Of a stretch of 64,000 nucleotides of DNA, positions 17,689 to 54,800 are shown piece by piece; position 1 is the stretch's first letter; every line of letters begins with the position of its first letter. The notes under the pieces are model-generated. The model saw nothing but the letters and a program-made list of their open reading frames with translations. It ran no database searches and was not told the DNA's origin. A program made the position numbers and the translations under genes. The DNA is taken from positions 18,414,001 through 18,478,000 of the forward strand of contig CM074511.1 in the NCBI GenBank assembly GCA_037379345.1, written 5' to 3'. This DNA is from Perna viridis (taxonomy: Eukaryota).

Positions 17689-18478
17689 GTAACGAACTGT
17701 TCAAGGGGCGTACACAACCAACGGCTTTATTTTTTTTTATCAAAGAAATAGCTTTAACTCATTGTATTCCGGGTTTATTTTCCGTCGAAATTTTAGGGGG
17801 GAATGGAATGATGGAAAAATAAACAACAACCATACGAATTAAAAACCACTTAAAGATATGTCCTTGCGGAAATCTGTCGATGTAATCCAATTTATCACGC
17901 GTGGTACCAGTCAGGCGCACTACGTATAGTGTGTCCTCCCGTTTAACTGTTTTTCTAGTTTGTAATGAGGTAAGTTCTACTTTTAGAAAAAGTCTGCACG
18001 GTTTTCCAAATCAATGATAAATTGGCTTTAAGTTTTAACAAAATTAGATCACTTACCGTGGCCGGATTAGCGTGTATCCGACACTCGCGCGCACACATGA
18101 GCTCAATAGATTAAACCCAACAGTGATCCGTTTTGTTAGTTTGCATGAAAAATACAGAAACTATTATTGTCAATTTCAAATAACTACAGATGACAATTAC
18201 ATATATAAGTGCGATGTTAAGTGTTTTCCTCTGTGTTTTCATGCTTTACATACTTTAGTATTTAGCTGACCTTCCTTTTAGTACAAAACAATACGTGCTT
18301 GTACAAGTACTGATGTCAAATATTTTCTGTTCATTTCACAGGTTAGTCAGAAGTAGACAAGACCAGCATTAATTAGCGTAGACTGACCAGCAGGGAGCGA
18401 ACACAGCGCCCACCAACAGCTTTTCTGAATTATTCATTTAAAACCACTCAAGCGTAAAACCACCTATATAAATCAACC

Positions 18479-18818
18479 ATGGCCCAAAGCGAGGCACAAT
18501 ATTACGACGACGAGGAGGACGAAGAGATGCCTATGACGGAGAGAGATCTCGCTGATGATGCTCAGTGGAAATTAATCCAAAAAAACACCTTTACAAGATG
18601 GGCAAATGAGCATCTTAAAACCGTTAATAAAGGAATTGCTGATTTAGAAACCGATCTTTCTGATGGATTAAGATTAATAGCTCTGGTTGAAGTTTTATCC
18701 GGCAAAAAATTCAAACATGTCAACAGAAGACCCAACTTCAGGACCCAAAAATTAGAGAATGTCACCAGAGTTTTAGAGTTTTTAGAGAGAGATGAAGGCA
18801 TTAGGATTGTAAATATAG
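18479..18818 (+). CDS. FLNA: Filamin coding exon 1 (CH1); the exon starts at 18342 including 5' UTR
   Basis: aaccATGg start; [46 protein letters not shown]...IRIVNI; donor g|gtaagg, phase 1. Confidence 0.95.
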
Positions 18819-21800
18819 GTAAGGGGAAGTTTTTGTTTATTTTTGCATGTTTGCCGGTAAATCAGTTAAGCATTGACACACCTGTATTTTCGTTTGTGAT
18901 TGACTGAGTCAAAGTGAAACTAGGATATATTTAGAACTGTTCGCACCTGCTCGACCTGGGCTAATTGGGTAAAGTACTACTGTAATAAAAGGCACACTAA
19001 AACAAAATATAAACATTATTTAATGACTTAATGACACACGCAGGTTTCTACCTGTAATCACGTCATACATGACGAATTGTTATTGTTTACCTGTATTATA
19101 AAGGTGTGCATGTCTTTCCAATACACATAATTGGGAATGTGCTGATGATGAGAGTTATAAAATTATAAACAATTTTCAATTCACTATACACTTACAAGCT
19201 AGTTGTTAACATCAACAACAAAAATAACACTTGGACATTTTCATGAAATATTTAAATTGTGAAATAATATGAGATTGTCAGTGTACTGGAAAAGTTTAAT
19301 TTTAATTGTAACATTCAAAGCAATCATTCAATTTGCATATACATGTACATGTATATTGTAACTATATATTTATTAAGTTAATGACTCCTAGTTTAGAAAC
19401 TTGTACATAAGATCTACATTGTTTATGTACTAGTTTCTAAACAAGGATTGAAAGAAAGTGTTATGCTTAAATCAAAAGATTTGCATTGAATACACCAATA
19501 CTTAAACTATTTAATATCAATTCAATAACTGTCCCTTTAGACCCCAGCCCAGTGTGAAATTCATTTTATTGGAATTTAATTTAATTTTGAAAATTATCTG
19601 TTACCTGTTAAAAATCTGGAGATAAAAGGAAATAAATCACTTGTACCTAATAATTTGTTGCCTGTCTGACAATGAAGTCTACCTACCAACCTAACCTACT
19701 GTTAGGGATGAGATCAATCCGTAGGAAATCAGTATTTAAATTTAGATGGAGCATTAGATCTATGATACCCCACAACACAAGTACATTAAAATACCATAAA
19801 ACTCCATGAATTATTTAAAGGGGTGTTACTACATGTAATAGACTTTTTGTATCTAAGTTCTGATTGAAAGAATAGTGTATGCCCTAACTTGGAATTATAC
19901 AGCTGTCAAACTTTCTACCTGATACCGTGACAGAGCTCCATGTTCATGGCAAGGTCTCGCCTAGTCTTACACCTTTTATCAAAATAAGATAAATCAGAGC
20001 TCTTTTATAGTGTATTGTTATTTTAGCCCTGAACATGCCAGTTTTATATGATCTGGTTGCAATTCTGTCCGGTGATATAAAAATACAAAATTCTTTTCTT
20101 TATTCATTCAAATTTCTGATTCAGAATTTAAAACCCTCCTTAACTCAATACAGTAAGAAGCTGTATAAATATCTGTTCACCTGTGAGTCAGATTTTCATT
20201 TCGAAAGTAAAATGATTTGTGTAAAATGATATGGAGACCTTTGTCATCAGGGTCAACTAATATACCATTTGTAAAGGTTACTTTACATTTGACATTAATA
20301 TTTTTGGAGAATTTGATATTTATTCTGACTTGGTACATGTACATGTTCAGGATTTGACTCAAGCTAGTACTCTAAAACAGAGAAAAGAGTTAGAAGTGTG
20401 TAATTATCTGTTTTCCTGTACCAGTTTTTAGGATTCTTGGTGCTCTTATTCTTCATGAAACTTAGAATGGTTTTAATCAAGTCTTCAAAATATATTTTTT
20501 TCTAAGATCAAAGATTGAAGCATATTAAAAATTCTTGTAAATGTATTTAAATTTATGAGCTGAATCACTTAACAGGCCCGAATTTACAATGGTACATGCA
20601 TAAACATTTTTACATTTGTGGTTCATAGACAATCTTGGGAGGTAGGGCAATTGAGTTGTAAAGCTGTTGGATTTTTAGCCCTCTAGTAAATGTTAGTTCC
20701 CCTGGCAATATTTTGTATCGATTACACATAGGTGTCTTACAGAGGTAAAAGTAAAGAAAAATTCCAACTTTTTGCAGTGTAATTATGTTTTATCTTCTGA
20801 GAATTAAGATGTCTCTAAAAACCTCATGACGTCTTCATGGGAATTGTTTTTTGCATCCTGTGTTTTATGTAGCATCATAGATAAATATTTAAAATTGCCT
20901 TGAAAAACAATACATGGAAGATATGGTGTATGTAATGTTGCTTCTAATACTCCATAAATTTGAAGGAGATAAGTGCAGTCATAAGTGTTTGTGTTCAGAC
21001 TTTTGTATTAAGATACTTAGGTCTCATATCATGGTGCAGGATGCTTGAATAATAATCGGTAACATAAAAAAATGTTACATACTGACTAGGATGATCTAAA
21101 AACTACTGTAAGCTTTTTGAGTTGCATACCATTAAAATTTGGTCTTATAAGCAAACCTAGAGTGGCAGACCAGGGGGAAGGGGAGATGATGAGGACTTGG
21201 CACACCCTTTGAATTTTGTTAATTTGGGGCAAGATTTTGATTGCCATCATATTACTCAACAGATTGATTTTGAATAAGTCCAATGCAATATTTTTTAACA
21301 GCTTTGTTACTGGCACATTCCTCCATACTCAATAATTTCTGAGTAAATGGGAATCTTAATCACTCAGGTAGAAAATCATATCCATTTACGTATCTGCCAT
21401 AAAAATCTGTTACTGAAATTGAAAATCTATCTTTATATGATACTGTTTATGGTAAAAAGCATCACAAATACATTAATGTCAAATACATACATCCAGGTCA
21501 GAGTTTATTCATAAAAAAATCTATTGTTAGGTCAACAGAAAGTGAAAGAACAAAGGATTGGAAAAGTTGTAGATGGGAGGGTAAAATTAAAAAAAAACAT
21601 TAACAGAGCACTTATAGAATTTATATTCAAAATATTTTTGTTCAGTCATTGGAAGATTTGGGGACAGGTTAACTGCAGTCAAAGCAATATATGGAATTAT
21701 ATCCCACTCTGATATTTGTGTTTCTGTCATGAGTATGAAAATAACCAGGAGAGCAGTAGCAAAGAAGCTTTTTTGGTTTTAAAAGACAGTGACATAGATA

Positions 21801-33800: not shown

Positions 33801-36800
33801 TATTTACTGGTACTGAAGACTTGGTTCTTTTTTGTTTATTTTGTTTATACAAACTCGTAGCTGCATTCTATTATTTCTTTGAGGTTTCCAAGGAGATCTT
33901 TGCTACCAAAAGAAAACACATACTTCTTACAAAATCAAGAAAGTTGATAAACATATGGCCTAACTCTTTACATAATGATATTTAATTACACTGTACATGT
34001 ATGTTGTTATCACAGTAAAAAAAAATGCCACAACGAAGATTATCACCTTTTTCAGATTCTTGTACACTTGAACTATGTATCAAGTTTTTTTACCATGTTT
34101 TTTAAATTGTCTTTTAATTGTATATTTATATTGTTCTTTGTCTAATTTAACACATTTTGAATTATAGCTATATGTTGATGCAGCTGGAAATGTCACTGAT
34201 CCATACTTTTGAAGTTTGTCTTTTGAATGACATTAAGACTTATCATTCATTTTATTTCCATTTCAGATTCTTCAGATATTGTAGATGGTAACTTGAAGCT
34301 GATCCTTGGTCTGATATGGACCCTCATTTTACATTACTCTATCTCCATGCCCATGTGGGAAGGAGAAGAACCAGGACCCAGTGAAGGTGGACCCACACCA
34401 AAACAGAGATTGCTCAACTGGGTACAGAGCAAGTGTCCAGAACTGCCCATTAAGAACTTTAACAATGATTGGAACGATGGTAAAGCCATCGGTGCTTTGG
34501 TTGATGCTGTTGGTCCAGGTAAGATATCACATCTTAGAATGATGGTAAAGCGATGGGTGCTTTGGTTGATGCTGTTGGTCCAGGTAAGATATGACATCTT
34601 AGAACGATGGTAATGCCATCAGTGCTTTGGTTGATGCTGTTGGTCCAGATAGATATCACATGTTTTAAAATGACATTGACAACACTCATTATGATGGATA
34701 AATATTAACTATAAGACCAATGAAAATGTTTACATTTGCCCATTTTTGTATTGGTTTATATTTGGCTTGAAATTTTTCTAGAAAACAAAAAATAGAAGAT
34801 AGGGTCCACCAAATGATTGATTCTTTGAAATAAGTTAGGATTGAAAAAAAGGGTCCATCAAATGATTGATTCTTTGAAATGAGTTCGGATTGAAAAAAAG
34901 GGTCCATCAAATGCTTGATTCTTTGGAATATGAAAAAAGTTCGGATTGTAAAAATGGGTCCATTAAATGCTTGATTCTTTGAAATAAGTTAGGATTGAAG
35001 AAAAAAATAAACAACTTATTAGGTATCCCAAGGCTAATGCAGCTGAAGGAAATGTCAAACCTAAAAGGTCTTTGTATATTCCAAAACAGTTTTAGAAATT
35101 AATTAACCACATAAAAATGTACTGATAATATTAAAAATATTGCACTTAATTATCGTGAATCATCACCAATAAGTTTTTTTCTGTTATATCATGTTATGCA
35201 CCCTTGGCATGAGATAGTAAATTGTTATGATTAATGCAAGCAAGACAAAAACACCCTTTACAGTAACCTTGAAATAATACAGTGGAAATATGTCGGTGAA
35301 AGTGAAACCAAGGGAGGTCATGTTTTTACCCTTGCTATACAAATATTACAAGCAGTATTTCAAAGAAATACTACTTCTATTTCTAAACATTTCGTTCATG
35401 GATATATTTACGAGTGATACCATCCCACACACTGAAAGTGTACTAAATCTTTTGTTATTAAGTATATGTCAAAAATACAGTGTATAGAAGGTGTATATGT
35501 TAACATTCATTCGTTATTTGAAGCTGAATCGGCTTTTTGGTCAAAATCTTTTATCTGTATTTACATGTTATCTTTATTTCTGTTTATAATTGATCATATT
35601 TCTATATCACAAACAGTGAGTCATCTTATGTCTGGTTAATTCCCTATGTATCATCCCTTTCTTATTACTATTCTACAAAGTAATATTATAATTCTGTATT
35701 CAGGTTTATGCCCAGACTGGGAAGACTGGAACCCTAAAGATGCCAAGAAAAATGCCAAAGAAGCTATGGATGCTGCTGAAAAATGGCTAGATATTCCACA
35801 GGTACAACACATTGTAACTTATCCACCATACCCCCAATATCTCATGGCTAGATATTCCACAGGTACAAAACATTGTATCCACCATACCCCCAATGTCTCA
35901 TGGCTAGATTTTCCACAGGTACAAAGCATTGTATCATACCCCCAATATCTCATGGCTAGATATTCCACAGGTACAAAGCATTGTATCATACCCCAATATC
36001 TCATGGCTAGATATTCCACAGGTACAAAACATTGTATCCACCATACACCCAATATCTCATGGCTAGATATCCCACAGGTACAAAGGATTGTATCATACCC
36101 CCAATGTCTCATGGCTTGATATTCCACAAGTACAAAGCATTGTATCCACCATACCCCCAATATCTCAAATAGCCATATATGGAGAACATTCAGTTCTTGT
36201 ATTCATTTGAGTCTTCAGTTTCTTTTTATCCTGAAATGTATTGAAAAAAATTGGAAAACAAAATCATTATATTACATGAAGAGTATCCTAAGTTTAAGGT
36301 GTAAAATATGGAGTAAATACAAATTATTCTATTCTAATCCACTAGTAACTTCTTTTTACATAGAGTTAATGACTTTTTTATTTAGCAAGTGTTTCTTTTC
36401 ATTTGTTTTGTGTAATAGTAGCTGAGGTTTTTTCCGGTGCAGTCGGTATAGTTTCGCTTTTTTACCCTTTGACCTTAAAGATGCTCTTCCATGGAAACAC
36501 AAGTCACCTGATCGCAATTCTGTTTCCTGATTGGCCAAATACTGATAACTTAGTTGTGTTAGAAAAAACTGTATCAAAAATTAAAATTGTGTGCCATGTG
36601 TTATTTCCCGAATGAAAATTATAAGTAAAAGGAACAAATTTTACTGTGTCGGCTATCTTTATTTTTAAAGATAGTACCGGTACTTGTTTTATTTTCAATT
36701 ATGAAAAAAATGGAAAAAGTGCATCCAGGATCTTTTCTATCAGTTCATTGGTTTTTGCTTGAAAAAGAAAATAAAACGATTTTGCTACCTGTAGCCATTT

Positions 36801-42800: not shown

Positions 42801-45800
42801 TGACACTGTTATGTTAATTGTGGCTTAAAATACCAAGATGTGCTTGTGCTGAATTATCTGTGAGACTTTTTATCTCTAAATTAATATACATTGATTATAG
42901 CTTCCAATGCCAAGATGTGCTACGCTACTGGACGTGGTATCCAACCAAGAGGTATTAGGGTCAATGATAAAGCTCCATTCAGAGTGCACACTAAGGGAGC
43001 TGGAAATGGTGAAGTCAAAGTTCAAATCTTTGGTCCAGGTAAGTCAGCATTTATATAGAAGTCTGAAATCTTATAAAATTATTTTAAATAATGGTTAAAA
43101 TAGTTTTGAAGATAAAAGAACAACTGCAAAGTATGTATTTAAGCAAGCAGTTAAGTAACTTATTGATCGATTACTAGTAAATGATTTTTAGTACATTTAC
43201 ACATTCATGGTGAAAAGTTTGTTGAAAATGTAGAGAATTCATAAAATGTGTACTGTGCAACATATGTTTATGTATTTTGGTTTTCAAGGTGGTCAGGAAA
43301 TCAAATGTGTTCCACAAAAATCAAAAACAGAAGAAGGTGTCTGGGAATGCTTGTACATCCCACCTAAAGTCGGTCAGTACATTATCAATGTTACATTCGG
43401 AGATCAACATATCACAAAGAGTCCTTTTAAGGTTGATGTGGGTCCAACAAAAACCAGCAAGATTAGAGCTTATGGACCAGGTCTTTCTGAAGGTGTCTGT
43501 AACCAGCCTGCTAGGTTTACTGTTGAGACCAACGGAGAGGTCGGAGCTTTAGGTAAGAATAGTGTAGATAGACATTTAATTTGCAGTTGCAAGATCAATG
43601 TTTTTTTTTTTACATTGAAACTAGGTATGCTGGTCTCATTTTGCAGAATTTTTGTAAAATATAGATCATGTTCTAATGGAAAAAAGATATGGCAATAGGA
43701 AATTAACATTATGACAAGTGCACTTTACTAATTGCATAAAGAAAATATATCAATTCTTTACTGTATGTGTAAATAATTATGATAATTGAAACAAATTTTT
43801 CTTTTCTTTCAGGATTTTCCATTGAGGGACCATCAGAAGCTAAGATAGATTGTCAAGACAATGGAGATGGTTCAGCTGATGTTACATACTACCCCACAAG
43901 CCCTGGAGAGTATGCTGTGCACATCCTTTGTAATGACGAGGATATTCCAGAGTCTCCATACATGGCTCAAATTGCACCAGCTACCAATGCTTTTGATGCA
44001 TCCAAGGTTATTGCTGAAGGCCCAGGTCTACAGAAAACTGGTGTCACTACCAACAAATATGCTGAATTCACCGTAGACACCCGCAAGGCTGGAAAGGCTC
44101 CATTAAAGATCACATGTGAAGATGATCAACACAAACCTGTCAATGTAGAAATTGTAGACAAGAAGAACGGTACCTTTGCCTGTAAATACATGCCAAAGAA
44201 ACAGTGTAAACATACTGTCACCATTACATATGGTGGTGTCCAGATTCCTAAGAGTCCATTCAAGGTAAATTTAACTCAAACAGAAAAGGTCAAACATTCA
44301 TCTCTGTTAAGTGTGGTTTTCAGGGATAATTTTCTTCCTCTTTTTGGCAGGTTTTTTTTTTTTTGTGATTCAGATTTTGCCTTAACAATTCTTTATTTTA
44401 CAAGTTTTTGACTTCAATTTTGTCAATTTTCACTTACCTGTTGTTCCAGGTAAATCATCTCTGGGTTTTGTAAACGCCATATAAAAGGATAAATTTAATG
44501 GTTGTGTTAGGTGATTTTAAGTATAGTTCCATACCAATTCAAACTAACCTACAACGGTGAATGGCACATGATGATTTCAAAATTGTAATTGAATTTGCTT
44601 ATTTAACTGTTTATATAAAAGGATTCAAATAATGGCAAACTATGATCTAATAAAGCACTAGTGAAACTTTTATAAATTTGTTCTTTGTAATTATCAATGA
44701 ATTATCTCCCTTTGCATAGAAGGAACAGTGCTAATATGAGAAAACTTTGCATTTCTGGAAATAACCGCTGAAATAAATACAAAAACTAACAATAATAGGG
44801 AATCAATTTCTATCAATTGCCATATTTTTTTTTTATTTCTATATGGAGTGGTGTTTAATTTTTATGATAACAGCAAGGATTTCTTGAAACTGTTTTACTC
44901 TTCAAATTTACTTAGCATTCTCGTTTTCGGTGTGAATTGACCGAAAGCTATTCCAAACTACTAAATCCATCTGCTGAGGTAAAAAAAATATATTTTTTCA
45001 ATCATAAAATATCTTTGAGTATAGAAATCATTAAAAAAAATGCTTTGGATCGTCTCTTCAAAAGATCGTTTTTGAAGAAGAATTTTTAACAATTAAGATT
45101 TTTAATTAGGTTTTGGGGTTCTACGTATGTTAACCAAAGGCACTTATGATGCTTCAACTCGCTACGCCGCTTAGATCTCGAAGTGCCCAGCTGTCCGGAA
45201 AAGAGAATTAAGGATACTATTCACTTTTTTGGCTAACTTTGAAAATGAATTTGGTCAAATTTTGGAATAATGAACTAAAGCATACACACTACAAAAAGCC
45301 CAGGCATTCATTTGTGTTTTTATCATACCTAACTTGTTAAAAATAATCATTTAAACATAGTGATGAGCTATTTTTTATTCAGGTGAATGTTGGAGAAGTG
45401 AGTAACCCTGGTAATGTAAAGGTCTATGGACCTGGAGTAGAGAAAGGTGTCAAAACCTTCAAAACAACCTACTTTATTGTTGACTGTAAGAGTGCTGGTC
45501 CAGGTAAAAATCTTCTTAGTACATGTATTGATTTTTTATTTCTCTAGTGAAGGAGTCAAAAAATATTCTTTTTTTCATAATTAGTCCGTTGAGGTGAGTG
45601 TTCAAAATTTGCTAGGTTTTATTTCTTTGCTTTCTTGGTCAAGATGATGCTTTTCAAAACCTTTATTTATTGTGCTATTAGAATTGATAGCATGCTTACT
45701 CTAACCTCAGAAAACAACTTAGGGTAAGCATGCTATGAATTTTTCATAAAGCACTAATGCAAATATAGATTCAAATTCACTATGTCAATAGTTGTAAAAA

Positions 45801-48800
45801 ACAAATTCTATTCTTTGCAGTTCAGTTAAAGGGCTACTGCATGAAAATTGGGGAATATTAATCCTTGTAGCATATATTTCCCTTGCAAGTTGGTTGCAAT
45901 ATTAAATACTACTAAACACTGACTTTATACAATGCTTGCCTATTTGAGAACAAGTTTCATATTATTTCATAGAACTTAGAAATTCAAGGGATTCTAATTG
46001 TAATTACATTAACAAAGCAATGAAATAAGATGTTGAATTTATAAATATGTTAATATTGTTTCCAGGAGACATTGCCATTGCATTGGTTGATGCCCAAGGT
46101 AAAGATGTACCAGTCAATACCATTGACCAGAAAGACGGAACATTTAAGATTGAGTACACACCAAATAGCCCAGGGACGTACATTGTTTCAGTCTACTTTG
46201 CCAACCAAGAAATTCCCAAGAGTCCTATCAAGGTCAATGTTGAATCCAGTATTGACCTCAGCAAGGTCAAGGTTGTTGGACTTGATACACGTAAGTTTCA
46301 ATTTGTTTTTTTGTTAATTGTTTTTTATCAAAGCTTTTCCTAGTAGGAGTAGTACTGAAGTTGAGAACTTTTCATTTGCAGTGGTCCAAATTAAATTTCC
46401 ATGTTTTTTGTAGAAAGTAATCTCCCTAAAATGTTTTTTTTTATATGCAGTTGGGCCTTGATAATGGAGGTGCTTCAATAGTATGTCTGTGTTGGTACTG
46501 TATACAAAATTTGACACACCAAATTGTAAAAAAATATATGAAGGTTTAGCTTATAATTTCGCGTTTGTTTAATGCATTTGTGCAAACATCAGAAGAAACC
46601 CAGAAGATTGGTTCAGCTGCATATGAAAAGTATGTCCTTGCCCAAAGAGAAAAATGGCATGATTACCTTCCTTTGTATTTCTTTCTTAGCAATCAAAATT
46701 GGTGAGAAGAGAGACATCTCTGTTATCACCAAGGGTTGTGGTAAGGCTGATGGACCTGTCAAGGTGACAATGATTACACCCAGTAAAAAGAAGGTTAACA
46801 TTCCTGTCAAGGAAAGTTTGGAAACTTGGAAAGGCCAACTTGTTCCAACTGAAGTTGGACAACACACCATTGAGGTGACATATGGCAGTTTCAGTGTACC
46901 TAAATCACCTTTCACTGTCAATGTCACCTCTGCTGTTGACCTTAACAAAGTCAAGGTTGTAGGACTTGACAAACGTAAGTGGGTCTGTTGCCTTAACAGT
47001 GCATGGTGTTTTCAGTTTTTACCCACTGAACCTCGTGTTTTGACATCTGTGTTGCTTTTAAAATATGTATATTCACTTTTCAGGTCTATGTGAACATTGT
47101 CTGCTCAAGACATCATTGACATAACTTTTTTAAATCGTTAACTAATTGTTTAATTGCTGTTTGTCCCATATATCTTGTTATATGCTGTCTCCACTCATTT
47201 TACTTACTGATTTTACAAAATGAAATACAAACCATGTTATCAACAATTAATTAACTGTCTGTAATTACATGTTGACAGTTTTTGCTATGTCTACCCATGT
47301 ATCAAGTTTTGCCATGACAATGAATTCTGTATTGTTTTAAGGCTTGGATATTAAGCACATCTTAATTTTCAGATGTTGAAATGGATTTCATGCATCCTGC
47401 ATGAAGTGAGGAAATAATTAAAAAAAAAATCATAAAATGATTATTTAATTAGTAGATATATAACAGTTTAACATAAAACAGTTTTAAAACGTGTAGTTGA
47501 TTGATTTTTACCAGAATATATACTCAAGACTCTTCTGTAGAAACTACTTCAAACTCTTCATTCTATTAAATAAATAAAACCAAGTGTTCTTATTTATTTT
47601 TATCACTGCTTTGTAACTTTACTTAACTGTAAGAAGTTTCTGCTTATCTCCTTTGTTGAGCTCTTTGCCTATTTTCTTTCCTTCTTATTCTCAGCTATCA
47701 AAGTTAATGAGAAGAGAGAAATCTCTGTTATAACAAAGGGAGCAGGCAAATCTGATGGACCTGCCAAGGTTACCGCAACAACACCATCCAAGAAAAAGGT
47801 AGAAGTTCCATTGAAGGAAACACCTGACGGTTATGTTGGTAATCTCACTCCAACTGAGGTTGGAAAATATACCGTAGATGTAACATATGGAAGTGCTGTT
47901 GTTCCAAAATCTCCATTCACTGTTGATGTAACACCTGGTGTTGACCTTGGCAAGGTCACTGTTACAGGACTTGACACTCGTAAGTTGGCATGTTGCCTGC
48001 TTGCTTTGTGTGGCTGTCAACTGATATTTATGTACAGGAAATATTACTGGTGGAAATGTTTTATTGTCAAGAAGCTTTTAGATGATTTAGATTAGCTGCT
48101 TATAGGTTATAAAATGTTATAATTACATATGAAGAGCTGCTTAAAAGGACGAAATAACTTGTCTTTCAGCTGCTGTTAAAGATAGCTATGTAGATGGCAT
48201 ACTAATTACAGTGAAGGTTAGGGTTGAGTTCAATCTGGTTACTGTAGCTTGCTTCTTTCCTTGTAGCAATTAAAGTTGGGGAGAAAAGGAATATATCTGT
48301 TGTTACCAAGAGTGCTGGTAAATCTGATGGACCTGCTAAGGTTACCATGACTACACCTTCTAAAAAGAGATTTGAAATCCCTGTCCGAGTTAGTTCTGAA
48401 GGTTATGATGGTCAGATTGTTCCAACTGAAGTTGGACCTCATAAAATTGATGTAACATATGGCAGTTCTGTTGTTCCAAAGTCACCCTTTACTGTCAATG
48501 TTGTACCTGGTGTTGACCTAAGTAAGGTCAAGGTTACTGGACTTGACAAGCGTAAGTCGTCTTTGTTGATCTGTGTCTGGTTCTTGTTCAATACTCTATG
48601 GAGAGGGTTTTGTTTTTAGCATGTCTTTCAATAAAGATAATTATGTATTATGTCATTGGATGTCTGTTACTGTTGGTGATGAATGGTCTAACTTATCAAT
48701 GTCATTGGATGCCTGTTATTGTTGGTGATGAATCATCTAACTTATCAATGTTTTTGTATCTGTTGACTTTATCTGTATATTTTCAAATATATTGTTGTCA

Positions 48801-51800
48801 GCGTTGTTGATTAAAACAAGCTTTAACTGTTCTTTGTCTGTACCATTACCATGGATACATTTATTCCTGAGATTGTTATTGTTTGGCTGGTTCTGTTGTT
48901 GATTTTTTCCTTTTTTGTTTATGTTATGTCTTATTTTGTTTTCTCTCTAACATGAGTATTAATTGCTGCCGAAAATTGTTTAATTTGTTTGTTACTCTTT
49001 TAAAATAAATTTTCTAACATGGTTTTGTTTTTAGTCTGTGAATGAACTTGTTTTGTTGTATTTTACTAAATTGCATCCAAAGTTTCATTTTTGTATGCAT
49101 TTAGTTTTTGACATTTTTTTTCAACTTATTTTTTATTTATTTATTTTGAAATATATCAATAAAGTGCTATTTTCTATACATTCAAAAGTTCATAGATTTA
49201 CTTATTATATTTTTTATTGATAATTTACTGCATATTTATAGATTTTTAAAAAAAAGGAAATTAACTTAGATTATAAATTTTAGTTTGGAAGCAAAATAGA
49301 AGGTTCTATGTAGAAGAAGTCAGTGCATGTCCTGCCTTTCTATTCATAGTAGTGGAAAATCCCAATCTTTATTTAATAGCAATTAAAGTTAATGAAAAGA
49401 GAGATATTGCTGTTCTCACCAAGACTGCTGGAAAACCAGGAAAACCAGATGGGCCTGCTAAGGTTTCTATGACAACACCATCTAAAAAGAAGGTTGAAGT
49501 TCCTCTGAAGGAAACACCTGAAGGTTTTGTAGGTCAAATTGTTCCAACAGAAGTTGGGCCTCACACAGTTGATGTAACATGTGCTGGTAATCCAGTTCCT
49601 CAGTCTCCTTTCAATGTCAGTGTTGTACCAGGTGCTGACCTTAGCAAGGTCAAGGTTACAGGACTTGATAAACGTAAGTGGTGGTGTATTGAGAATGTTT
49701 TCAATGTAGTATTCTTTCTAGAGATACTTTTTTTAGAAGGAGATTTGATATGAAGGTTCTACTTTTGGTGCTATGGAGTAAAAGTCACTGCAATTTTCAG
49801 TTTTTCAGTTTGAATCATTGCAGTTTTGTCATGATTAATTGAATACAACAAGTGTCAATCATCATCATGTATGGGAGGAGATCAGTTTATTGTAAATTTC
49901 AGTCTCATTGTATTTGTAAAAAAAGTATAGTTTAATTTAGAAGAGTTTGCATGGATCTTGTTTTTGTTTTTATTGCAATTTTTTCATAGTCTTACTTTTG
50001 TCTTGTTGACGTATTTTGAACAGTGGTTTATTATTCAGTTACCAATAGTTACCAAAAGCTTCTCAGTTAGTCAAAATACTACTGCTTATAGACTGTGTTG
50101 GTTAATGAAAAATGTTTTCTACATGATATTCCAGTAGATAATAAGAGAGGACTACTGTACCTAAGAAAATCTTTAGTGGTACATTAGTATCTAATTACTT
50201 CCATGATAATGATATATGATCGGTAAGTATACAGTCTTTCTTCCATGCATCTACTAAGGCTTCATCACTATAGAAAAATGCTTACTTTTGCATGTTAATT
50301 GTGCTTTTATCTTTTTCATAGCAATTAAAATTGGTGAACAGAGAGATGTTGGCATTCTCACTAAGGCAGCTGGTCCCTCTGATGGACCTGCTAAGGTTAC
50401 CATGACAACACCCTCTAAGAAGAAGGTTGATGTCCCAGTCAAACAAACTCCAGAGGGTTTTGTTGGACAAGTTGTTCCATTTGAACTTGGACCTCATGAA
50501 GTTGATGTTTGCTATGGCAGCCAACCAGTGCCTCAGTCACCATTTAAGGTGGATGTTGTCCCAGAAGGAGCTGCAAAAGTCAAGGCTTATGGTCCTGGTT
50601 TAGAGAAAGGAACAGCCTTCACCCCTGCTACATTTACCATTGATACAAGGGAGTGTACAGCACCAGGTGAATTGGGTATCAATGTTGATGGTCCAATGGA
50701 ATGCCAGATTGATGTCAAGGAGAAACCCGATGGAACCATTGATGTATCTTACCTCCCTGAGAAACCAGGACAGTACAATATTGATGTTACTTATGGTGGT
50801 GAGAAGATACCAAAATCACCATTCAAACCAAAAATAGAACCAGGAAAACCAAGCAAGGATCTGAGTGGGGTCAAAGTTTACGGACCTGGAGTTGACAAAG
50901 CGGGTAATGATTGGCACTTGCATGGAAGGTTATGTACCTGTGTATGGAGGAATTACATCCCTTGTAAAATAATACATGCTTACCTGTGGTTGCGCAATAA
51001 CTTAATATAGCTGGGCTGTGGATGAATGGAGCAATATTGAAATATAATAACTGTCTTCTCTAACTTCTCTAGTCTACTGCTGGCTGAAAAAATTACCTGC
51101 TTTTTCTTAGAATCTGTCTGTTGTTCTACTGAAAATGCATGGAAACTGATGTTACTTTAAAATCAACCTTTAGAATGAAGACTACACTATATTACTCCTG
51201 ACCATTTTTCTGCATGGGAGTTTTCTTGATTTAGATGTTTTCTATTGTAATACCAACAGGAGGATCTAATTTTGCAGCTCGGACGTTAGAAAATAGATTT
51301 GCCCTGTGAGTTGTTTATTGAATGCTGAGTACAAAAGAGTGTCAAACTTACCACACTAAAGCTTTTTTATATGTTGTTAATTTTACACACTAATTATTTG
51401 TGTTAGTTGTAGTACAAACAAACAAAAAGTAAAAAAATATTTGATGTGTTTTGAAGAGAAAAGACAGAATTAACTGCAAGCATACATGTACAATGCTTGT
51501 ATGTTGCACATTTGAATGAAAATATTATTATCTCCCTTGCATACCTATTGACAAGTAACGTATTTTATTAATAGCAATGAAAGTATTGAAATCCTTAACA
51601 GAATTTGTAAATACTTTTGTCTATTGATTTAGTAATCCAGTAAATATTCATGTAGCCATCTTGTTTATGTGAATTTCCACAAGCCATATAAGGATTTGGA
51701 ATGTACTTTTATCTTATCCTGTATTATATGTATTGAGTGGGTTGAGGGTCTATCTTTTCTCCTTCTTTTTACAACTGGTTTAATGTTGTTTCTATAAAAG

Positions 51801-54800
51801 AATCAAAATTATCAAATTAATGGTGTCCTTCAAAATACCTATATGTTTCTTTGATAACATTTATTCTATCCACCTTCTGTATATAGAAAAATGTCAAGTG
51901 AAGATGTCTACTGTTAAAGTTCATAGTGATATTTGAACTTGCATGATGGGAAATGATGACATTAATTAAGAGTCAGTCCCTGTAAGAATCAAGCAGTGGT
52001 TAAAACATGATATAAAAAAAAACCACTATTTCGAATGTTCAATTTGACTATTTGCACTATCAGAACCAAGGTAAACAGACAGAACTTTCCATATCATTTT
52101 GGTACATTATGAAATGCATTGAAAATGAACATTTCAGGGGCGGATAACTCTGTCCAAAGCATCATTTTTCTAACATTTTATTGAAAAATTTCTTTAAGTA
52201 AATCCAGTGATGCAGAGATAATACCATGGTCTTTTCAAACAGAGGAAGCATCCTTGAGTGAAATTATATTGGCAGATCAGTAGGGTTTTGACATGCATGT
52301 TTCTGGTTTTTCCCATTTTTGCCTGATTTTTACAGATACTTACACTTAATTAGTAAATAGACTTGAGATAATATTGTGCAGAAATCAGTGTGTTAGGTAA
52401 ATGTGGACAATGTGATAATTACCCCCATAGTATTCCATTCACAATATGTTTCAGTTCTTGGTCTGGTCGCCTACATATATAATGGTTTGTGAAACCTTTG
52501 AAAATCATTTTTGTTTATAATTTCTCCAGGAAAATGTCACATCGATGGAGAGTAGACTCTGAAAGGTGGTTCACAAACTATACAACTAGATATGGTGACT
52601 TTGTACTTTTTTTTCTTTTTCTTTACTGAATGTGATTCATTTCATCTTTTTTATTTTGAAAATTTTTCTGATATTTTTAGAAAATTATAGATTTATTTTG
52701 ATTTTTCAAACTTTATATATAACTAATTATTAATTTATTGATTTTTAGGAGTATTCATGGATTCTCCCACTGAGTTCACTGTAGATGCCAAATCTGTATC
52801 ACCAAATGGAACTGGCAACGTGAGAGCCATTGTCACCAATCCATCTGGTGTCCGAAATGATACTATGGTCACCAACAAGAAGGATGGAACATATGATGTT
52901 CTCTACACACCTGTTGAGGAAGGTAAGTTTTAAATGACCCAACCTACCATGTTCCCTACACACCTGTAGAGGAAGGTAAATTTTGAACTTCCCTCAATTT
53001 ATTACAATTGTGATGAATTAAGATTAAAACTTTACCATTTGAATGGAGAAAAAATTTAGACCACTCAATACCGAAGGAGAAACTATATTTTTAAGTTTTC
53101 TACTCCATGAGCTTTTATTTCAAATTTTTTTGTTCTTTGTTTTACAAAGAAATCACTATAAATTTTTTGTGAACTCTGTTGTTGGTTGAAATGAATCACA
53201 GAAACTCCATATTTTGTTTTACTGTAGGGACATTAACCTATGAGTATTGCCTAAAAATATCAAATTTGTTGTAATAATATATAAGTTATTCATAACATAG
53301 TAAAATATATAAATACATAAATATAAGTAAATAATAATAATTTGTGGCATTAGTTCATAGTAATGACATCATAATGGTGCCATAATTTTACGTTGTTTAG
53401 CAAAAACTGCTGAAAATTGTAAATTTTGTTGTTTTTACAGACACATTTACATCCAAAAAACTATGTCCACATAGAAGAAACAACTTAATATTTTCACATG
53501 TAATTAACTATGTAATAATGAATGTATTCATTAAATATGAAGTAGTTTCTTGTGGACACCATTTCCTTGCCAAAAATATGAACAGAAAATGACCAAAAAG
53601 TACAAAATTTGACAGAATATCTGAATATTGATAAACTTCAAGCAATTTTTCTGTCCTTTCAATTTAAGAATTACCAGAATTATTTATGTTTTCTCATTTG
53701 TGATAGATTTAAGATTATTCAACACTTCATGATCAATTTGCAGTTTAGTTTTATGCCATTTAGACACTTTATCGCCCATCCTCCTTTCCTGTTAACTCTG
53801 TTGTTGGTTAGTTTGGAAATAAATCATGAAAATTTTGTATTTTGTTTTATCCTGGGCTGGCCATTAATATTGCATTATTTTCTCCTGGCCAGTAGCAAGG
53901 GTTTAAATATCGACATAAATTGCCAGCCTGTGGTAAAACAATTATGAAATGGAGTTTTTGTGATTTAAGATATTTCAATTCTAAAAGGACTAGTTCTTCA
54001 TACGTTTAATAGACACAGCCAATTTGTTGCATGAAATGGTGACATTTGTGAACTAAATTTTGTTGTGACGTAAAGTTGGGTAAAAATATTTATGATGTGG
54101 GAAAAAGACAATCATACATCTATAATGTTGGCCATTTGGTTATCACTGTTTTACCACAGTTGTGGTCTAAAGAGCTTTGAAAGACATCATATTAGAATAT
54201 TCTATTTCTTAATTCCAATAAACCAAAGATAAGAAATCGATATGATTGACACCTATAGAGAGGTGTAAAAAGGCACAAGAATTCAATAAGAATAATTGAT
54301 TTAAAATTACTTAGGTACAATGGCTATTGATGTTACCTATGATGAGATGCCAATCCCCCAGAGTCCATTGAAGGTTAACGCCACACCAGGCAGTGATGCC
54401 AGCCGTGTCAAAGCCTACGGACCTGGTCTGGATGGTGGTATTGTCAACAGGAAACAGGAGTTCACTGTAGACATCAAGGGTGCTGGACAAGGTGGTCTTG
54501 GATTGGCCATTGATGGACCTGCTGAGACACAGATTGGATGTAAGGACAACCATGATGGTACATGTACAGTGGATTACCTCCCTGTCAAACCTGGAGATTA
54601 TGCTGTTTCTGTTAAGTTTGCCGATCAGGAAATCCCAGGTATGTTATGATATGTAATTGTTTTATTGAGAAATATTCTCAATTACATTCAGTTTTATTTT
54701 TGGCAGTTATATTAAGGTATACCTCTGCCTTCTTGTACAATAGTGTGAAAAAAAATTCAGTGGATAGGTTTTTAAAAGGCAGAAAGCTCCATTTTGTTTT

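What the first reader, a model, noticed from the sequence alone, without database searches (positions are those of the whole stretch)
46066..50903. Tandem array of symmetric Ig-repeat exons: a possible splice-tunable filamin rod
Seen: five closely related Ig domains ([29 protein letters not shown]...PTEVG.H..DVTYG...VP.SPF.V.V). Four are on separate 285/285/285/294-nt exons, all phase 1-1. These four and the preceding exon all end in the same C|GTAAGT donor, while the introns show no obvious similarity. Each exon is offset relative to the domain (it ends with the next domain's first strand, DL.KVKV.GLD), so skipping any subset still gives whole domains. Known: the GPG-less 'DLSK.KV.GL' start is typical of vertebrate filamin repeat 8, which is single-copy. 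Inference: a lineage-specific exon amplification that could yield rods with 1-5 copies (up to 16 combinations), changing cross-link spacing, for example between muscle types.
Basis: partly seen in the sequence, partly recalled or inferred. Interest (0 to 1): 0.8.

Follow-up and report, generated by a model that had tools for sequence, protein, structure and literature searches.

The report
Alternatively spliced Ig-repeat exons in mussel filamin
A mussel filamin gene carries five duplicated, frame-neutral exons, each encoding one rod domain, and public RNA data show they are included in different subsets or skipped altogether, so the actin cross-linker is made in several lengths.

Summary
Exons at 46690-46974, 47695-47979, 48267-48551, 49380-49673 (285/285/285/294 nt) and the first half of 50322-50903 encode five paralogous filamin Ig repeats. 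All are phase 1-1. Each carries one domain body plus the first strand of the next domain.

Spliced RNA contigs from four studies join the exon-A donor (46290) to E1, E2, E5 (the predicted 46290>50322) or directly to the next exon at 52749. E2 is also joined to E4, skipping E3. By contig depth, the form lacking all five exons looks commonest (about 50-90%).

The copies are old (dS 0.75-1.4) and under purifying selection. E1, E2, E3 and E5 each have a 1:1 orthologue in Mytilus, which has seven copies.

Other molluscs amplified R8-like or R9-like repeats independently at the same site, up to about 17 copies. Hemichordate and amphioxus gene models skip the R8-R10 block at the same junction.

UGCAUG motifs are enriched about sixfold in the array's introns, and some are conserved in position, which suggests Rbfox control.

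RefSeq models of Mytilus already contain such isoforms, but I found no paper describing them. The effect on rod length is inferred, not tested.

The parts
45381..45503 (+). Constitutive exon encoding the end of repeat 5 and the start of repeat 6; its donor is at 45504
   Evidence: Joint 45498>46061, which fits equally as 45503>46066 (GT..AG), in all four runs at depth 31-249. Weak Pfam Filamin match, 26.4 bits against a 26.9 cut-off. Splice site read.
46066..46290 (+). Exon A: body of repeat 6 plus a GPG-less first strand ([12 protein letters not shown]). Its donor C|GTAAGT is the branch point of the alternative splicing
   Evidence: In all four runs the contigs end exactly at 46290, and separate junction contigs lead from there to E1, E2, E5 or exon F.
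46690..46974 (+). E1, cassette exon 1 (285 nt, phase 1-1), R8-like Ig repeat
   Evidence: Joints A>E1 in 3 runs and E1>E2 in 2 runs. 1:1 orthologue of Mytilus copy 1 and of copy 1 on the related contig L001 (support 100/99).
47695..47979 (+). E2, cassette exon 2 (285 nt, phase 1-1)
   Evidence: Joint A>E2 (skipping E1) in 2 runs; E2>E4 in 4 runs. 95% identical in protein to Mytilus copy 2.
48267..48551 (+). E3, cassette exon 3 (285 nt, phase 1-1), the copy most often skipped
   Evidence: Skipped by the E2>E4 joint in all 4 runs. E3>E4 joint in run X3; an exon-only contig in run X13. Orthologue of Mytilus copy 3 (98/90).
49380..49673 (+). E4, cassette exon 4 (294 nt, phase 1-1; has a 3-residue insert)
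   Evidence: Joint E4>E5 in 4 runs. Groups with Mytilus copies 4-6 and L001 copies 3-4, unresolved.
50322..50903 (+). E5, a two-domain cassette exon (582 nt, phase 1-1): the fifth R8-like repeat plus an R9-like repeat and the first strand of the next domain; donor G|GTAATG
   Evidence: Its second half matches the vertebrate R9 profile best (82 bits). Joint A>E5 in run X13. The same 29-nt continuation follows both 50904 and 46291, which shows E5 itself is skipped.
52749..52922 (+). Exon F: body of the R11-like repeat, the common acceptor after the array
   Evidence: The 29-nt loose end maps uniquely to 52750-52778. The acceptor is tttttag|G. Best profile match is R11, 52 bits. Pfam Filamin.
50289..50294 (+). 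UGCAUG motif 33 nt upstream of E5, at the same distance in a second mussel species
50904..50985 (+). Conserved intron stretch just downstream of E5, with UGCAUG at 50919-50924 (16 nt after the exon)
   Evidence: It aligns with the related contig L001 (11337-11425) although the introns are otherwise unalignable; the motif there lies 17 nt after the exon.
47000..47005 (+). UGCAUG 26 nt downstream of E1; a Mytilus genomic contig has one about 27 nt downstream of its copy 1
49324..49329 (+). UGCAUG 56 nt upstream of E4
   Evidence: The Mytilus contig L012 has one roughly 70 nt upstream of its copy 4.

Best explanation
This is the variable middle of rod 1 of a mussel filamin gene.

Shown:
- Five tandemly duplicated exons encode R8-like Ig repeats. 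Each exon holds the body of one repeat plus the first strand of the next, and all are phase 1-1.
- Exon A and E1-E4 share the donor C|GTAAGT, and E1-E5 share a YAG|C acceptor. Any donor-acceptor pairing therefore keeps the frame and rebuilds a complete Ig domain. The codon split across the junction reads Pro before an E exon, Arg for A to F and Gly for E5 to F.
- In RNA the donor of exon A is joined to E1, E2, E5 or straight to the R11-like exon F, and E2 is joined to E4. Transcripts thus carry from zero to several copies. The zero-copy form, which is 577 residues (six domains) shorter than the all-included form, looks most abundant.
- The copies arose by exon duplication within the mussel family, at a site where hemichordate and amphioxus models also skip R8-R10.

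Inferred:
- The choice of exons is regulated, probably by Rbfox-type proteins binding the enriched and partly conserved intronic UGCAUG motifs.
- The main effect is to change the length of rod 1, and hence the distance between the N-terminal actin-binding head with repeats 1-6 and repeats 11-15. That would tune cross-link geometry or compliance in different cells.
For: Anatomy:
- Exon borders, phases and splice sites.
- Pfam Filamin on every exon.
- CH domains at 18458-18904 and 34227-34610, and a repeat order collinear with vertebrate R1-R6, R9, R11-R15.

RNA (four runs from four studies, GT..AG joints at exact exon borders):
- A>E1 in 3 runs; A>E2 in 2; A>E5 in 1.
- A>F in 4 runs: the same 29-nt continuation follows 46291 and 50904, and it maps to 52750.
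- E1>E2 in 2 runs; E2>E4 in 4; E3>E4 in 1; E4>E5 in 4.
- One contig in each of runs X1 and X12 spans E2+E4+E5 and runs into F.
- The E5 contig has 12-48% of the depth of the exon-A contig.

These joints are not assembly chimeras or retrocopies:
- No two exons share 31 identical bases, and the exon ends are at most 87% alike.
- The genome has a single locus for these exons.

Selection and age:
- Omega 0.23-0.38 and dS 0.75-1.4 between copies.
- 1:1 orthologues of E1, E2, E3 and E5 in Mytilus, with strong support.
- RefSeq models of Mytilus with 7, 6, 5, 4, 3, 1 and 0 copies and the same junction residues.
- Ptychodera isoform X3 against X9/X10, and long against short amphioxus models, skip R8-R10 at the same junction.

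Regulation:
- TGCATG occurs 10 times in 4727 nt of array introns against 1.6 expected. None of 1000 dinucleotide-preserving shuffles reached 10 (largest 6). The reverse complement occurs only 3 times, and the 5' part of the gene has 0.23 per kb.
- The motifs at -33 and +16/17 of E5 are conserved in a second species, and the one at about +26 of E1 is conserved in Mytilus.

Length: SAXS found human FLNC domains 8-9 to be the most extended domain pair (PMC4170960).
Against: - All RNA evidence comes from contigs of runs whose RNA label is a guess. Contigs give no tissue, no full-length isoform and only rough abundance.
- A>E5 rests on one run with 26 nt on its shorter side.
- E2>E3 is only inferred, from contigs that stop 11 nt into the sequence shared by E3 and E4.
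- Nothing here measures protein, rod length or actin cross-linking.
- The Rbfox link rests on motif statistics. A search of this genome for the Fox-1 C-terminal domain found nothing, but it also found nothing in any control genome, so it is uninformative.
- The match of the domain bodies to R8 is modest: 39-41 bits, 4-10 bits ahead of the next repeat, and E2 scores higher against R3.
- The deuterostome isoforms are computed gene models that I did not check against reads.
Confidence: 0.75

Rival explanations
1. The copies serve as a binding platform. Splicing would then set how many identical docking or phosphorylation sites the rod offers to a partner protein or kinase, and the length change would be a by-product.
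For: Many charged positions are invariant across all ten copies from two species: K2, E5, R7, K14, D20, K24, K33 and E54, numbered on the first copy. So is the stretch T-P-S-K-K-K, which fits a proline-directed kinase site. GE.R, D.P, EGY and GPH recur even in the distant clam copies. That is more conservation than a pure spacer would seem to need.
Against: No partner is known or predicted. The TPSKKK stretch is not kept in clam or vertebrate R8. Oysters and snails amplified the neighbouring R9-like repeat at the same site instead, which fits a generic length module better than one specific binding surface.
Confidence: 0.2
2. Inclusion is splicing noise or a decaying relic. The working protein would be the zero-copy form, and the cassette exons would be included only at low, unregulated levels.
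For: The exon-A contig is 2-8 times deeper than the cassette contigs. E1 and E3 contigs are often only 3-10 deep, and some continue into introns, which looks like pre-mRNA.
Against: All five copies are open and under purifying selection (omega 0.23-0.38). E1, E2, E3 and E5 have been kept as 1:1 orthologues across mussel genera. E5 reaches 40-48% of exon-A depth in two runs. The flanking intron sequence and UGCAUG motifs are conserved. Clams keep about 16 copies as 1:1 orthologues between Mercenaria and Dreissena.
Confidence: 0.07
3. The copies act as an extensible spring, like the tandem Ig segments of titin. Extra domains would add reversible unfolding length under load, for example in catch or byssus-retractor muscle, rather than setting a static spacing.
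For: It resembles the differential splicing of titin's tandem Ig exons (my own knowledge). Filamin sits in dense bodies and Z-discs, and a scallop study reports protein-mRNA discordance for filamin between catch and striated muscle (PMC5963113).
Against: There are no mechanical data, and the tissue of the runs is unknown. The hypothesis overlaps with length tuning and cannot be separated from it by sequence.
Confidence: 0.1

Closest known systems
Vertebrate filamin splice variants (FLNA/FLNB var-1 lacking 41 residues of repeats 19-20; skipping of the hinge-1 exon, exon 30 of FLNB, controlled by RBFOX1 and QKI, PMC6103745; FLNB variants, PMC2199218)
   Same: The same protein family, with in-frame cassette skipping inside the rod. 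One human case is Rbfox-dependent.
   Different: The vertebrate events lie in rod 2 or the hinge, remove part of a domain or a linker, and change ligand binding or flexibility. Here whole Ig domains of rod 1 (the R8/R9 position) are added or removed, in a tandem array of duplicates and in many combinations.
Differential splicing of tandem Ig exons in titin's I-band
   Same: Symmetric exons that each encode an Ig-type domain. Variable numbers are included, so one gene gives proteins of different length and compliance.
   Different: A different protein and domain family (I-set Ig, not the filamin repeat). In titin the exon equals the domain, whereas here the exon is offset by one strand, so each junction builds a hybrid domain.
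RefSeq (Gnomon) isoform models of filamin in Mytilus edulis, M. trossulus, M. californianus and M. galloprovincialis, and the Mytilus coruscus 'filamin-like protein-1' (A0A0K0YAX9)
   Same: The orthologous gene and the same array. The models have 7, 6, 5, 4, 3, 1 or 0 copies with the same junction residues.
   Different: They are automatic models with no description or analysis. Mytilus has seven copies where this genome has five. This report adds direct junction evidence in another genus, the orthology of the copies, the comparison across molluscs and deuterostomes, and the intronic motifs.
Mutually exclusive tandem exon clusters (Dscam1 type)
   Same: Tandemly duplicated exons that encode Ig-like segments and are used alternatively.
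   Different: These exons are not mutually exclusive: single contigs carry E1+E2 and E2+E4+E5. The introns share no docking or selector similarity.

Membership tests
Filamin (actin-binding head plus PF00630 repeats) | Two calponin-homology domains at the N-terminus | tested here: met
   PF00307 matches at 18458-18904 (57 bits) and 34227-34610 (48 bits) on the same strand upstream.
Filamin (actin-binding head plus PF00630 repeats) | A series of Filamin/ABP280 repeats collinear with vertebrate repeats | tested here: met
   PF00630 on every exon tested. Repeat-specific profiles built from 65 vertebrate filamins give the order R1-R6, array, R9, R11-R15 in the window; no R7 or R10 equivalent was found.
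Filamin (actin-binding head plus PF00630 repeats) | Rod 2, hinges and the dimerising repeat 24 | not tested
   They lie beyond the window's end. The Mytilus orthologue has R16-R24.
Vertebrate filamin repeat 8 (orthology of the copies) | GPG-less first strand of the type DLSK.KV.GL | tested here: met
   This strand sits at the start of repeat 8 in killifish FLNC and toad FLNA, and at the ends of exon A and E1-E4.
Vertebrate filamin repeat 8 (orthology of the copies) | The domain body is closest to R8 among the 24 repeats | tested here: inconclusive
   R8 is the best profile for E1, E3, E4 and E5a (39-41 bits, margins 4-10 bits). E2 scores 44.7 against R3 and 38.7 against R8. The single oyster copy scores R8 51 against R7 38. 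With the exon tail included, R7 wins for E1-E3, because vertebrate R7 is followed by the same strand.
Alternatively spliced cassette exons | Symmetric phase, so that skipping keeps the frame | tested here: met
   All six exons are phase 1-1 with lengths divisible by 3. The A>F and E5>F junctions stay in frame.
Alternatively spliced cassette exons | Both inclusion and skipping junctions seen in RNA from independent samples | tested here: met
   Nine junction types in contigs from four runs of four studies. Paralogue chimeras and retrocopies are excluded.
Alternatively spliced cassette exons | Tissue- or stage-dependent inclusion | not testable with these tools
   Run identities and tissues are coded, and only contigs were available. 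Inclusion does differ between runs: E1 is about 2-4% of exon-A depth in X1 and X13 against about 28% in X3.
Rbfox-regulated exons | UGCAUG enriched in the flanking introns on the sense strand | tested here: met
   10 observed against 1.6 expected; 0 of 1000 dinucleotide-preserving shuffles reach 10; the antisense motif occurs 3 times.
Rbfox-regulated exons | Motifs conserved in position between species | tested here: met
   -33 and +16/17 of E5 in the window and in L001; about +26/27 of E1 in the window and in the Mytilus contig L012. Other motifs are not conserved.
Rbfox-regulated exons | An Rbfox protein is present and inclusion depends on it | tested here: inconclusive
   A PF12414 search of the genome found nothing, but it also found nothing in any control genome. 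Dependence needs an experiment.
Mutually exclusive exon cluster | Exactly one exon of the array per transcript | tested here: not met
   Contigs carry E1+E2 and E2+E4+E5.

The most novel reading that the evidence does not exclude
The junction between repeat 6/7 and repeat 11 of filamin may be an ancient bilaterian length-cassette site. The GPG-less first strand at the end of the upstream exon would act as a universal adaptor that can complete either an R8-type or an R11-type domain. The block in between would then be optional in hemichordates, amphioxus and molluscs, and would have been amplified independently to anywhere from 1 to about 17 domains. In mussels, Rbfox-type UGCAUG elements would select how many are used, giving a genetically encoded, cell-type-specific ruler for actin cross-link length.
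Probability: 0.4. Interest if true: 0.7.

Novelty: new variant of a known kind. Interest (0 to 1): 0.55.

Why it matters
Filamin is a textbook actin cross-linker, and its rod length is treated as fixed in vertebrates. Here one gene makes rods that differ by up to six Ig domains, roughly 20 nm per subunit if each repeat adds about 3.5-4 nm (that figure is from my own knowledge).

Related molluscs carry from 1 to about 17 copies at the same site. This natural series makes a standing question directly testable: how do the length and valency of a cross-linker shape actin networks, dense bodies and muscle mechanics such as catch?

It is also a clean case of exon duplication in which the exon is offset from the domain by one strand, so every splice junction yields a hybrid but complete domain.

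The finding is tempered because equivalent isoforms already sit, undescribed, in RefSeq models of Mytilus.

Tried and rejected
- Rod-2 idea. The first PDB search put FLNA repeats 19-21 and other even/odd rod-2 pairs on top, which suggested the copies were like repeat 20. I rejected this after building repeat-specific profiles: R20 scores only 28-31 bits against the bodies, R8 scores 39-41, and the gene order is collinear with rod 1. No solved structure of repeat 8 appeared among the PDB hits, which biased that search.
- R7 versus R8. Whole exons E1-E3 score best against R7, but only because vertebrate R7 is followed by the same GPG-less strand. With the tail removed, R8 wins.
- Pseudo-exons. 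A six-frame profile scan of the whole window found no further decayed copies in the introns.
- Shared intron elements such as docking or selector sites: none.
- Assembly chimeras between paralogous exons: excluded. The longest shared exact stretch is 29 nt.
- Processed pseudogene as the source of the spliced contigs: the genome has only the one locus.
- Rbfox gene search with PF12414: blank and uninformative.
- Literature. Six searches found no description of this array or of filamin cassette splicing in molluscs. Light et al. 2012 on filamin repeat evolution is not held, so I could not check whether it mentions invertebrate copy-number variation.
- Earlier notes of this scan. A word search gave nothing.
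- Steps left out. For the same reason I did not fold a hybrid domain.


Full report
**Observation.** Their lengths are 225, 285, 285, 285, 294 and 582 nt. The frame opens at the third base of each exon, so all are phase 1-1. A and E1-E4 end C|GTAAGT; E5 ends G|GTAATG. Every exon matches Pfam Filamin. For E1-E4 the match starts at profile position 19 and runs to the end. The five copies are 54-71% identical in protein. They form a sharp subfamily: 158-172 bits against their own profile, while every other repeat in the window scores 43 bits or less. The introns share nothing.

**Gene context.** The exons belong to a filamin gene that starts at about 18.46 kb with a CH-domain exon; a second CH piece lies at 34.2 kb. 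The gene runs past the window's end. With them the window reads R1, R2, R3, R4, R5, R6 (exon 45381-45503 plus exon A), the array, R9 (second half of E5, 82 bits), R11 (exon F 52749-52922), then R12-R15. I found no R7 or R10 equivalent.

**Which repeat the copies resemble.** With the exon tail removed, four of the five bodies match R8 best (39-41 bits). E2 scores slightly higher against R3. The single oyster copy matches R8 clearly, 51 bits against 38 for R7. The GPG-less strand sits at the start of repeat 8 in killifish FLNC and toad FLNA. 'R8-like' is therefore reasonable but not strongly proven. An early PDB hit to FLNA repeats 19-21 did not survive this test.

**RNA evidence.** One search for sequencing runs found 20 holders in 6 studies. 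I laid contigs of four runs from four studies on 45150-51100. The runs are only guessed to be RNA, but their contigs carry GT..AG joints at the exact exon borders, so they are spliced. The genome holds no second copy of these exons, which rules out a retrocopy.
- A>E1: runs X13, X1, X3.
- A>E2, skipping E1: runs X13, X1.
- E1>E2: runs X12, X3.
- E2>E4, skipping E3: all four runs.
- E3>E4: run X3.
- E4>E5: all four runs.
- A>F: in all four runs the sequence following 46291 is the same 29 nt that follows 50904. It maps uniquely to 52750-52778, just after an acceptor at 52748. So exon A is also joined directly to exon F, skipping all five exons. That junction is in frame (GLDT, then Arg, then VFMDSPTEF).
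- In X13 and X3 the E2 contig stops 11 nt into the sequence shared by E3 and E4. This is what a de Bruijn graph does when both continuations exist, so E2>E3 is inferred for those runs.
- Single contigs carry E1+E2 (run X3) and E2+E4+E5 running into F (runs X1, X12), so the exons are not mutually exclusive.
- No two exons share 31 identical bases, and the exon ends are at most 87% alike, so the joints are not assembly chimeras or misassigned donors.

**Abundance.** Contig depth is a crude measure. The exon-A contig has depth 132, 31, 249 and 84 in X13, X12, X1 and X3. The E5 contig has 16, 15, 42 and 34, that is 12-48% of exon A. The zero-copy form therefore seems to make up about half to nine-tenths of transcripts. 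E1 ranges from about 2-4% (X1, X13) to about 28% (X3).

**Age and evolution of the mussel array.** Pairwise dS is 0.75-1.4 and omega 0.23-0.38, so the duplicates are old and all under purifying selection.
- A JGI metagenome contig from a related mussel (L001, about 80% exon identity) has the same five-copy array.
- RefSeq filamin of Mytilus has seven copies.
- In a maximum-likelihood tree of 57 copies, all mussel copies form one clade (99/93), the three scallop copies another (99/98), and the clam plus unionid copies a third (99/99). E1, E2, E3 and E5 each pair 1:1 with Mytilus copies 1, 2, 3 and 7 with strong support. E4 groups with Mytilus copies 4-6.
- The array of at least four to five copies therefore predates the split of these mussel genera. 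It is lineage-specific at family level.

**The same site in other animals.** Classifying every repeat of 21 filamins shows a constant R1-R6 and R11-R24 in all molluscs, with a variable middle.
- Mussels: 5-7 R8-like repeats plus one R9-like.
- Heterodont clams: about 17 R8-like repeats, 1:1 between Mercenaria and Dreissena.
- Oysters: one R8-like plus about six R9-like.
- Snails: one R8-like plus 1-15 R9-like.
- Scallops: two or three R8-R9 pairs.
- Ptychodera: isoform X3 has a 305-residue R8-R9-R10 insert that X9 and X10 skip, with the junction GLET, Arg, VFLDSPT.
- Amphioxus: long models are collinear with R1-R24, and a short one goes from R7 to R11.

The optional middle block and the adaptor-like strand thus look older than molluscs. 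These deuterostome isoforms are gene models that I did not check against reads.

**Isoforms already in databases.** Mytilus RefSeq models include forms with 7, 6, 5, 4, 3, 1 and 0 copies.
- Two different five-copy subsets are listed.
- One form splices copy 5 directly to the R11 exon.
- One-copy forms are equivalent to 46290>50322. Among them is the M. coruscus 'filamin-like protein-1' known from shell proteomics (PMC6641155).

Six literature searches found no paper that describes or interprets this. A scallop study only notes protein-mRNA discordance for filamin between catch and striated muscle (PMC5963113).

**Regulation (inferred).** TGCATG, the Rbfox binding motif by established knowledge, occurs 10 times on the sense strand in the 4727 nt of array introns.
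- 1.6 are expected, and none of 1000 dinucleotide-preserving shuffles reached 10 (largest 6).
- The reverse complement occurs 3 times.
- The density is 2.1 per kb, against 0.23 per kb in the 5' part of the gene and 0.63 per kb in the 3' part.
- Motifs lie 26 nt after E1, 56 nt before E4, and 33 nt before and 16 nt after E5.
- In L001 the two motifs flanking E5 sit at -33 and +17. About 85 nt of intron after E5 align there although the introns are otherwise unalignable.
- A Mytilus genomic contig has a motif about 27 nt after its copy 1.
- On both of those contigs every sense-strand motif lies inside the array region.
- Human FLNB exon 30 is a known RBFOX1/QKI target (PMC6103745).
- I could not show an Rbfox gene in this genome (uninformative).

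**Mechanism and function.** Shown: the modular exon design, the alternative junctions, the age and selection of the copies, and their parallel amplification elsewhere. Inferred: splicing sets the number of R8-like domains (0-5, with or without the R9-like one). The all-included and zero-copy forms differ by 1731 nt, which is 577 residues or six Ig domains. SAXS found human FLNC domains 8-9 to be the most extended two-domain pair (PMC4170960), so the simplest effect is a longer rod 1. The rivals are a variable-valency binding or phosphorylation platform, a titin-like spring, and splicing noise. The first is suggested by the many invariant charged positions and the TPSKKK stretch. The last is made unlikely by selection, orthology and the conserved intron elements.

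**Verdict.** It is a new variant of a known kind: differential splicing of Ig-domain exons, here in filamin rod 1. It is already implicit in automatic annotation of a sister genus, undescribed in the papers I could search, and part of a wider pattern at this site that may be ancient.

**Limits.** The evidence comes from contigs only. Tissues are unknown and abundance is approximate. There are no protein or mechanical data.

Noticed in passing
window 35783-36167: A 56-nt minisatellite (7 copies, 87% matches) inside a filamin intron just after a CH2-coding exon piece. It reads as long open frames and could mislead gene callers.
   Followed up: partly
window 50624-50647 and 50869-50889: In three runs a deep contig (depth 95-176) touches E5 only at these two short stretches, joined AG..GG, and has unrelated sequence on both sides. 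It probably belongs to another highly expressed transcript that shares short words with E5. Not explained.
   Followed up: no
window 46306: In runs X12 and X1 a contig matches the intron from 46306 onward but has 255 nt of unrelated sequence before it. This may be an insertion allele or a mobile element 16 nt into the intron after exon A.
   Followed up: no
window 46770-46790 and the matching place in E2-E5: All mussel copies and the oyster copy keep T/M-P-S-K-K-K, which fits a proline-directed kinase consensus followed by a basic run. Clam and vertebrate R8 lack it.
   Followed up: partly
protein P0113 (ENA contig, unknown oyster-like species); proteins P0203, P0188, P0191: Oysters and snails amplified the R9-like repeat rather than the R8-like one at the same site, up to about 15 copies in a Bradybaena model of 3765 residues.
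   Followed up: partly
window 18458-18904: The first filamin coding exon (start Met plus CH1) lies at the end of the stretch that another note (s1-751575) assigns to an SLMAP-filamin head-to-tail pair. I confirmed only the filamin side.
   Followed up: partly
whole genome G000: The genome is 723 Mb in 46 contigs, and the window is C1:18414001-18478000. The cassette exons are 80-95% identical in protein to Mytilus copies, so this is a mytilid mussel other than Mytilus.
   Followed up: no
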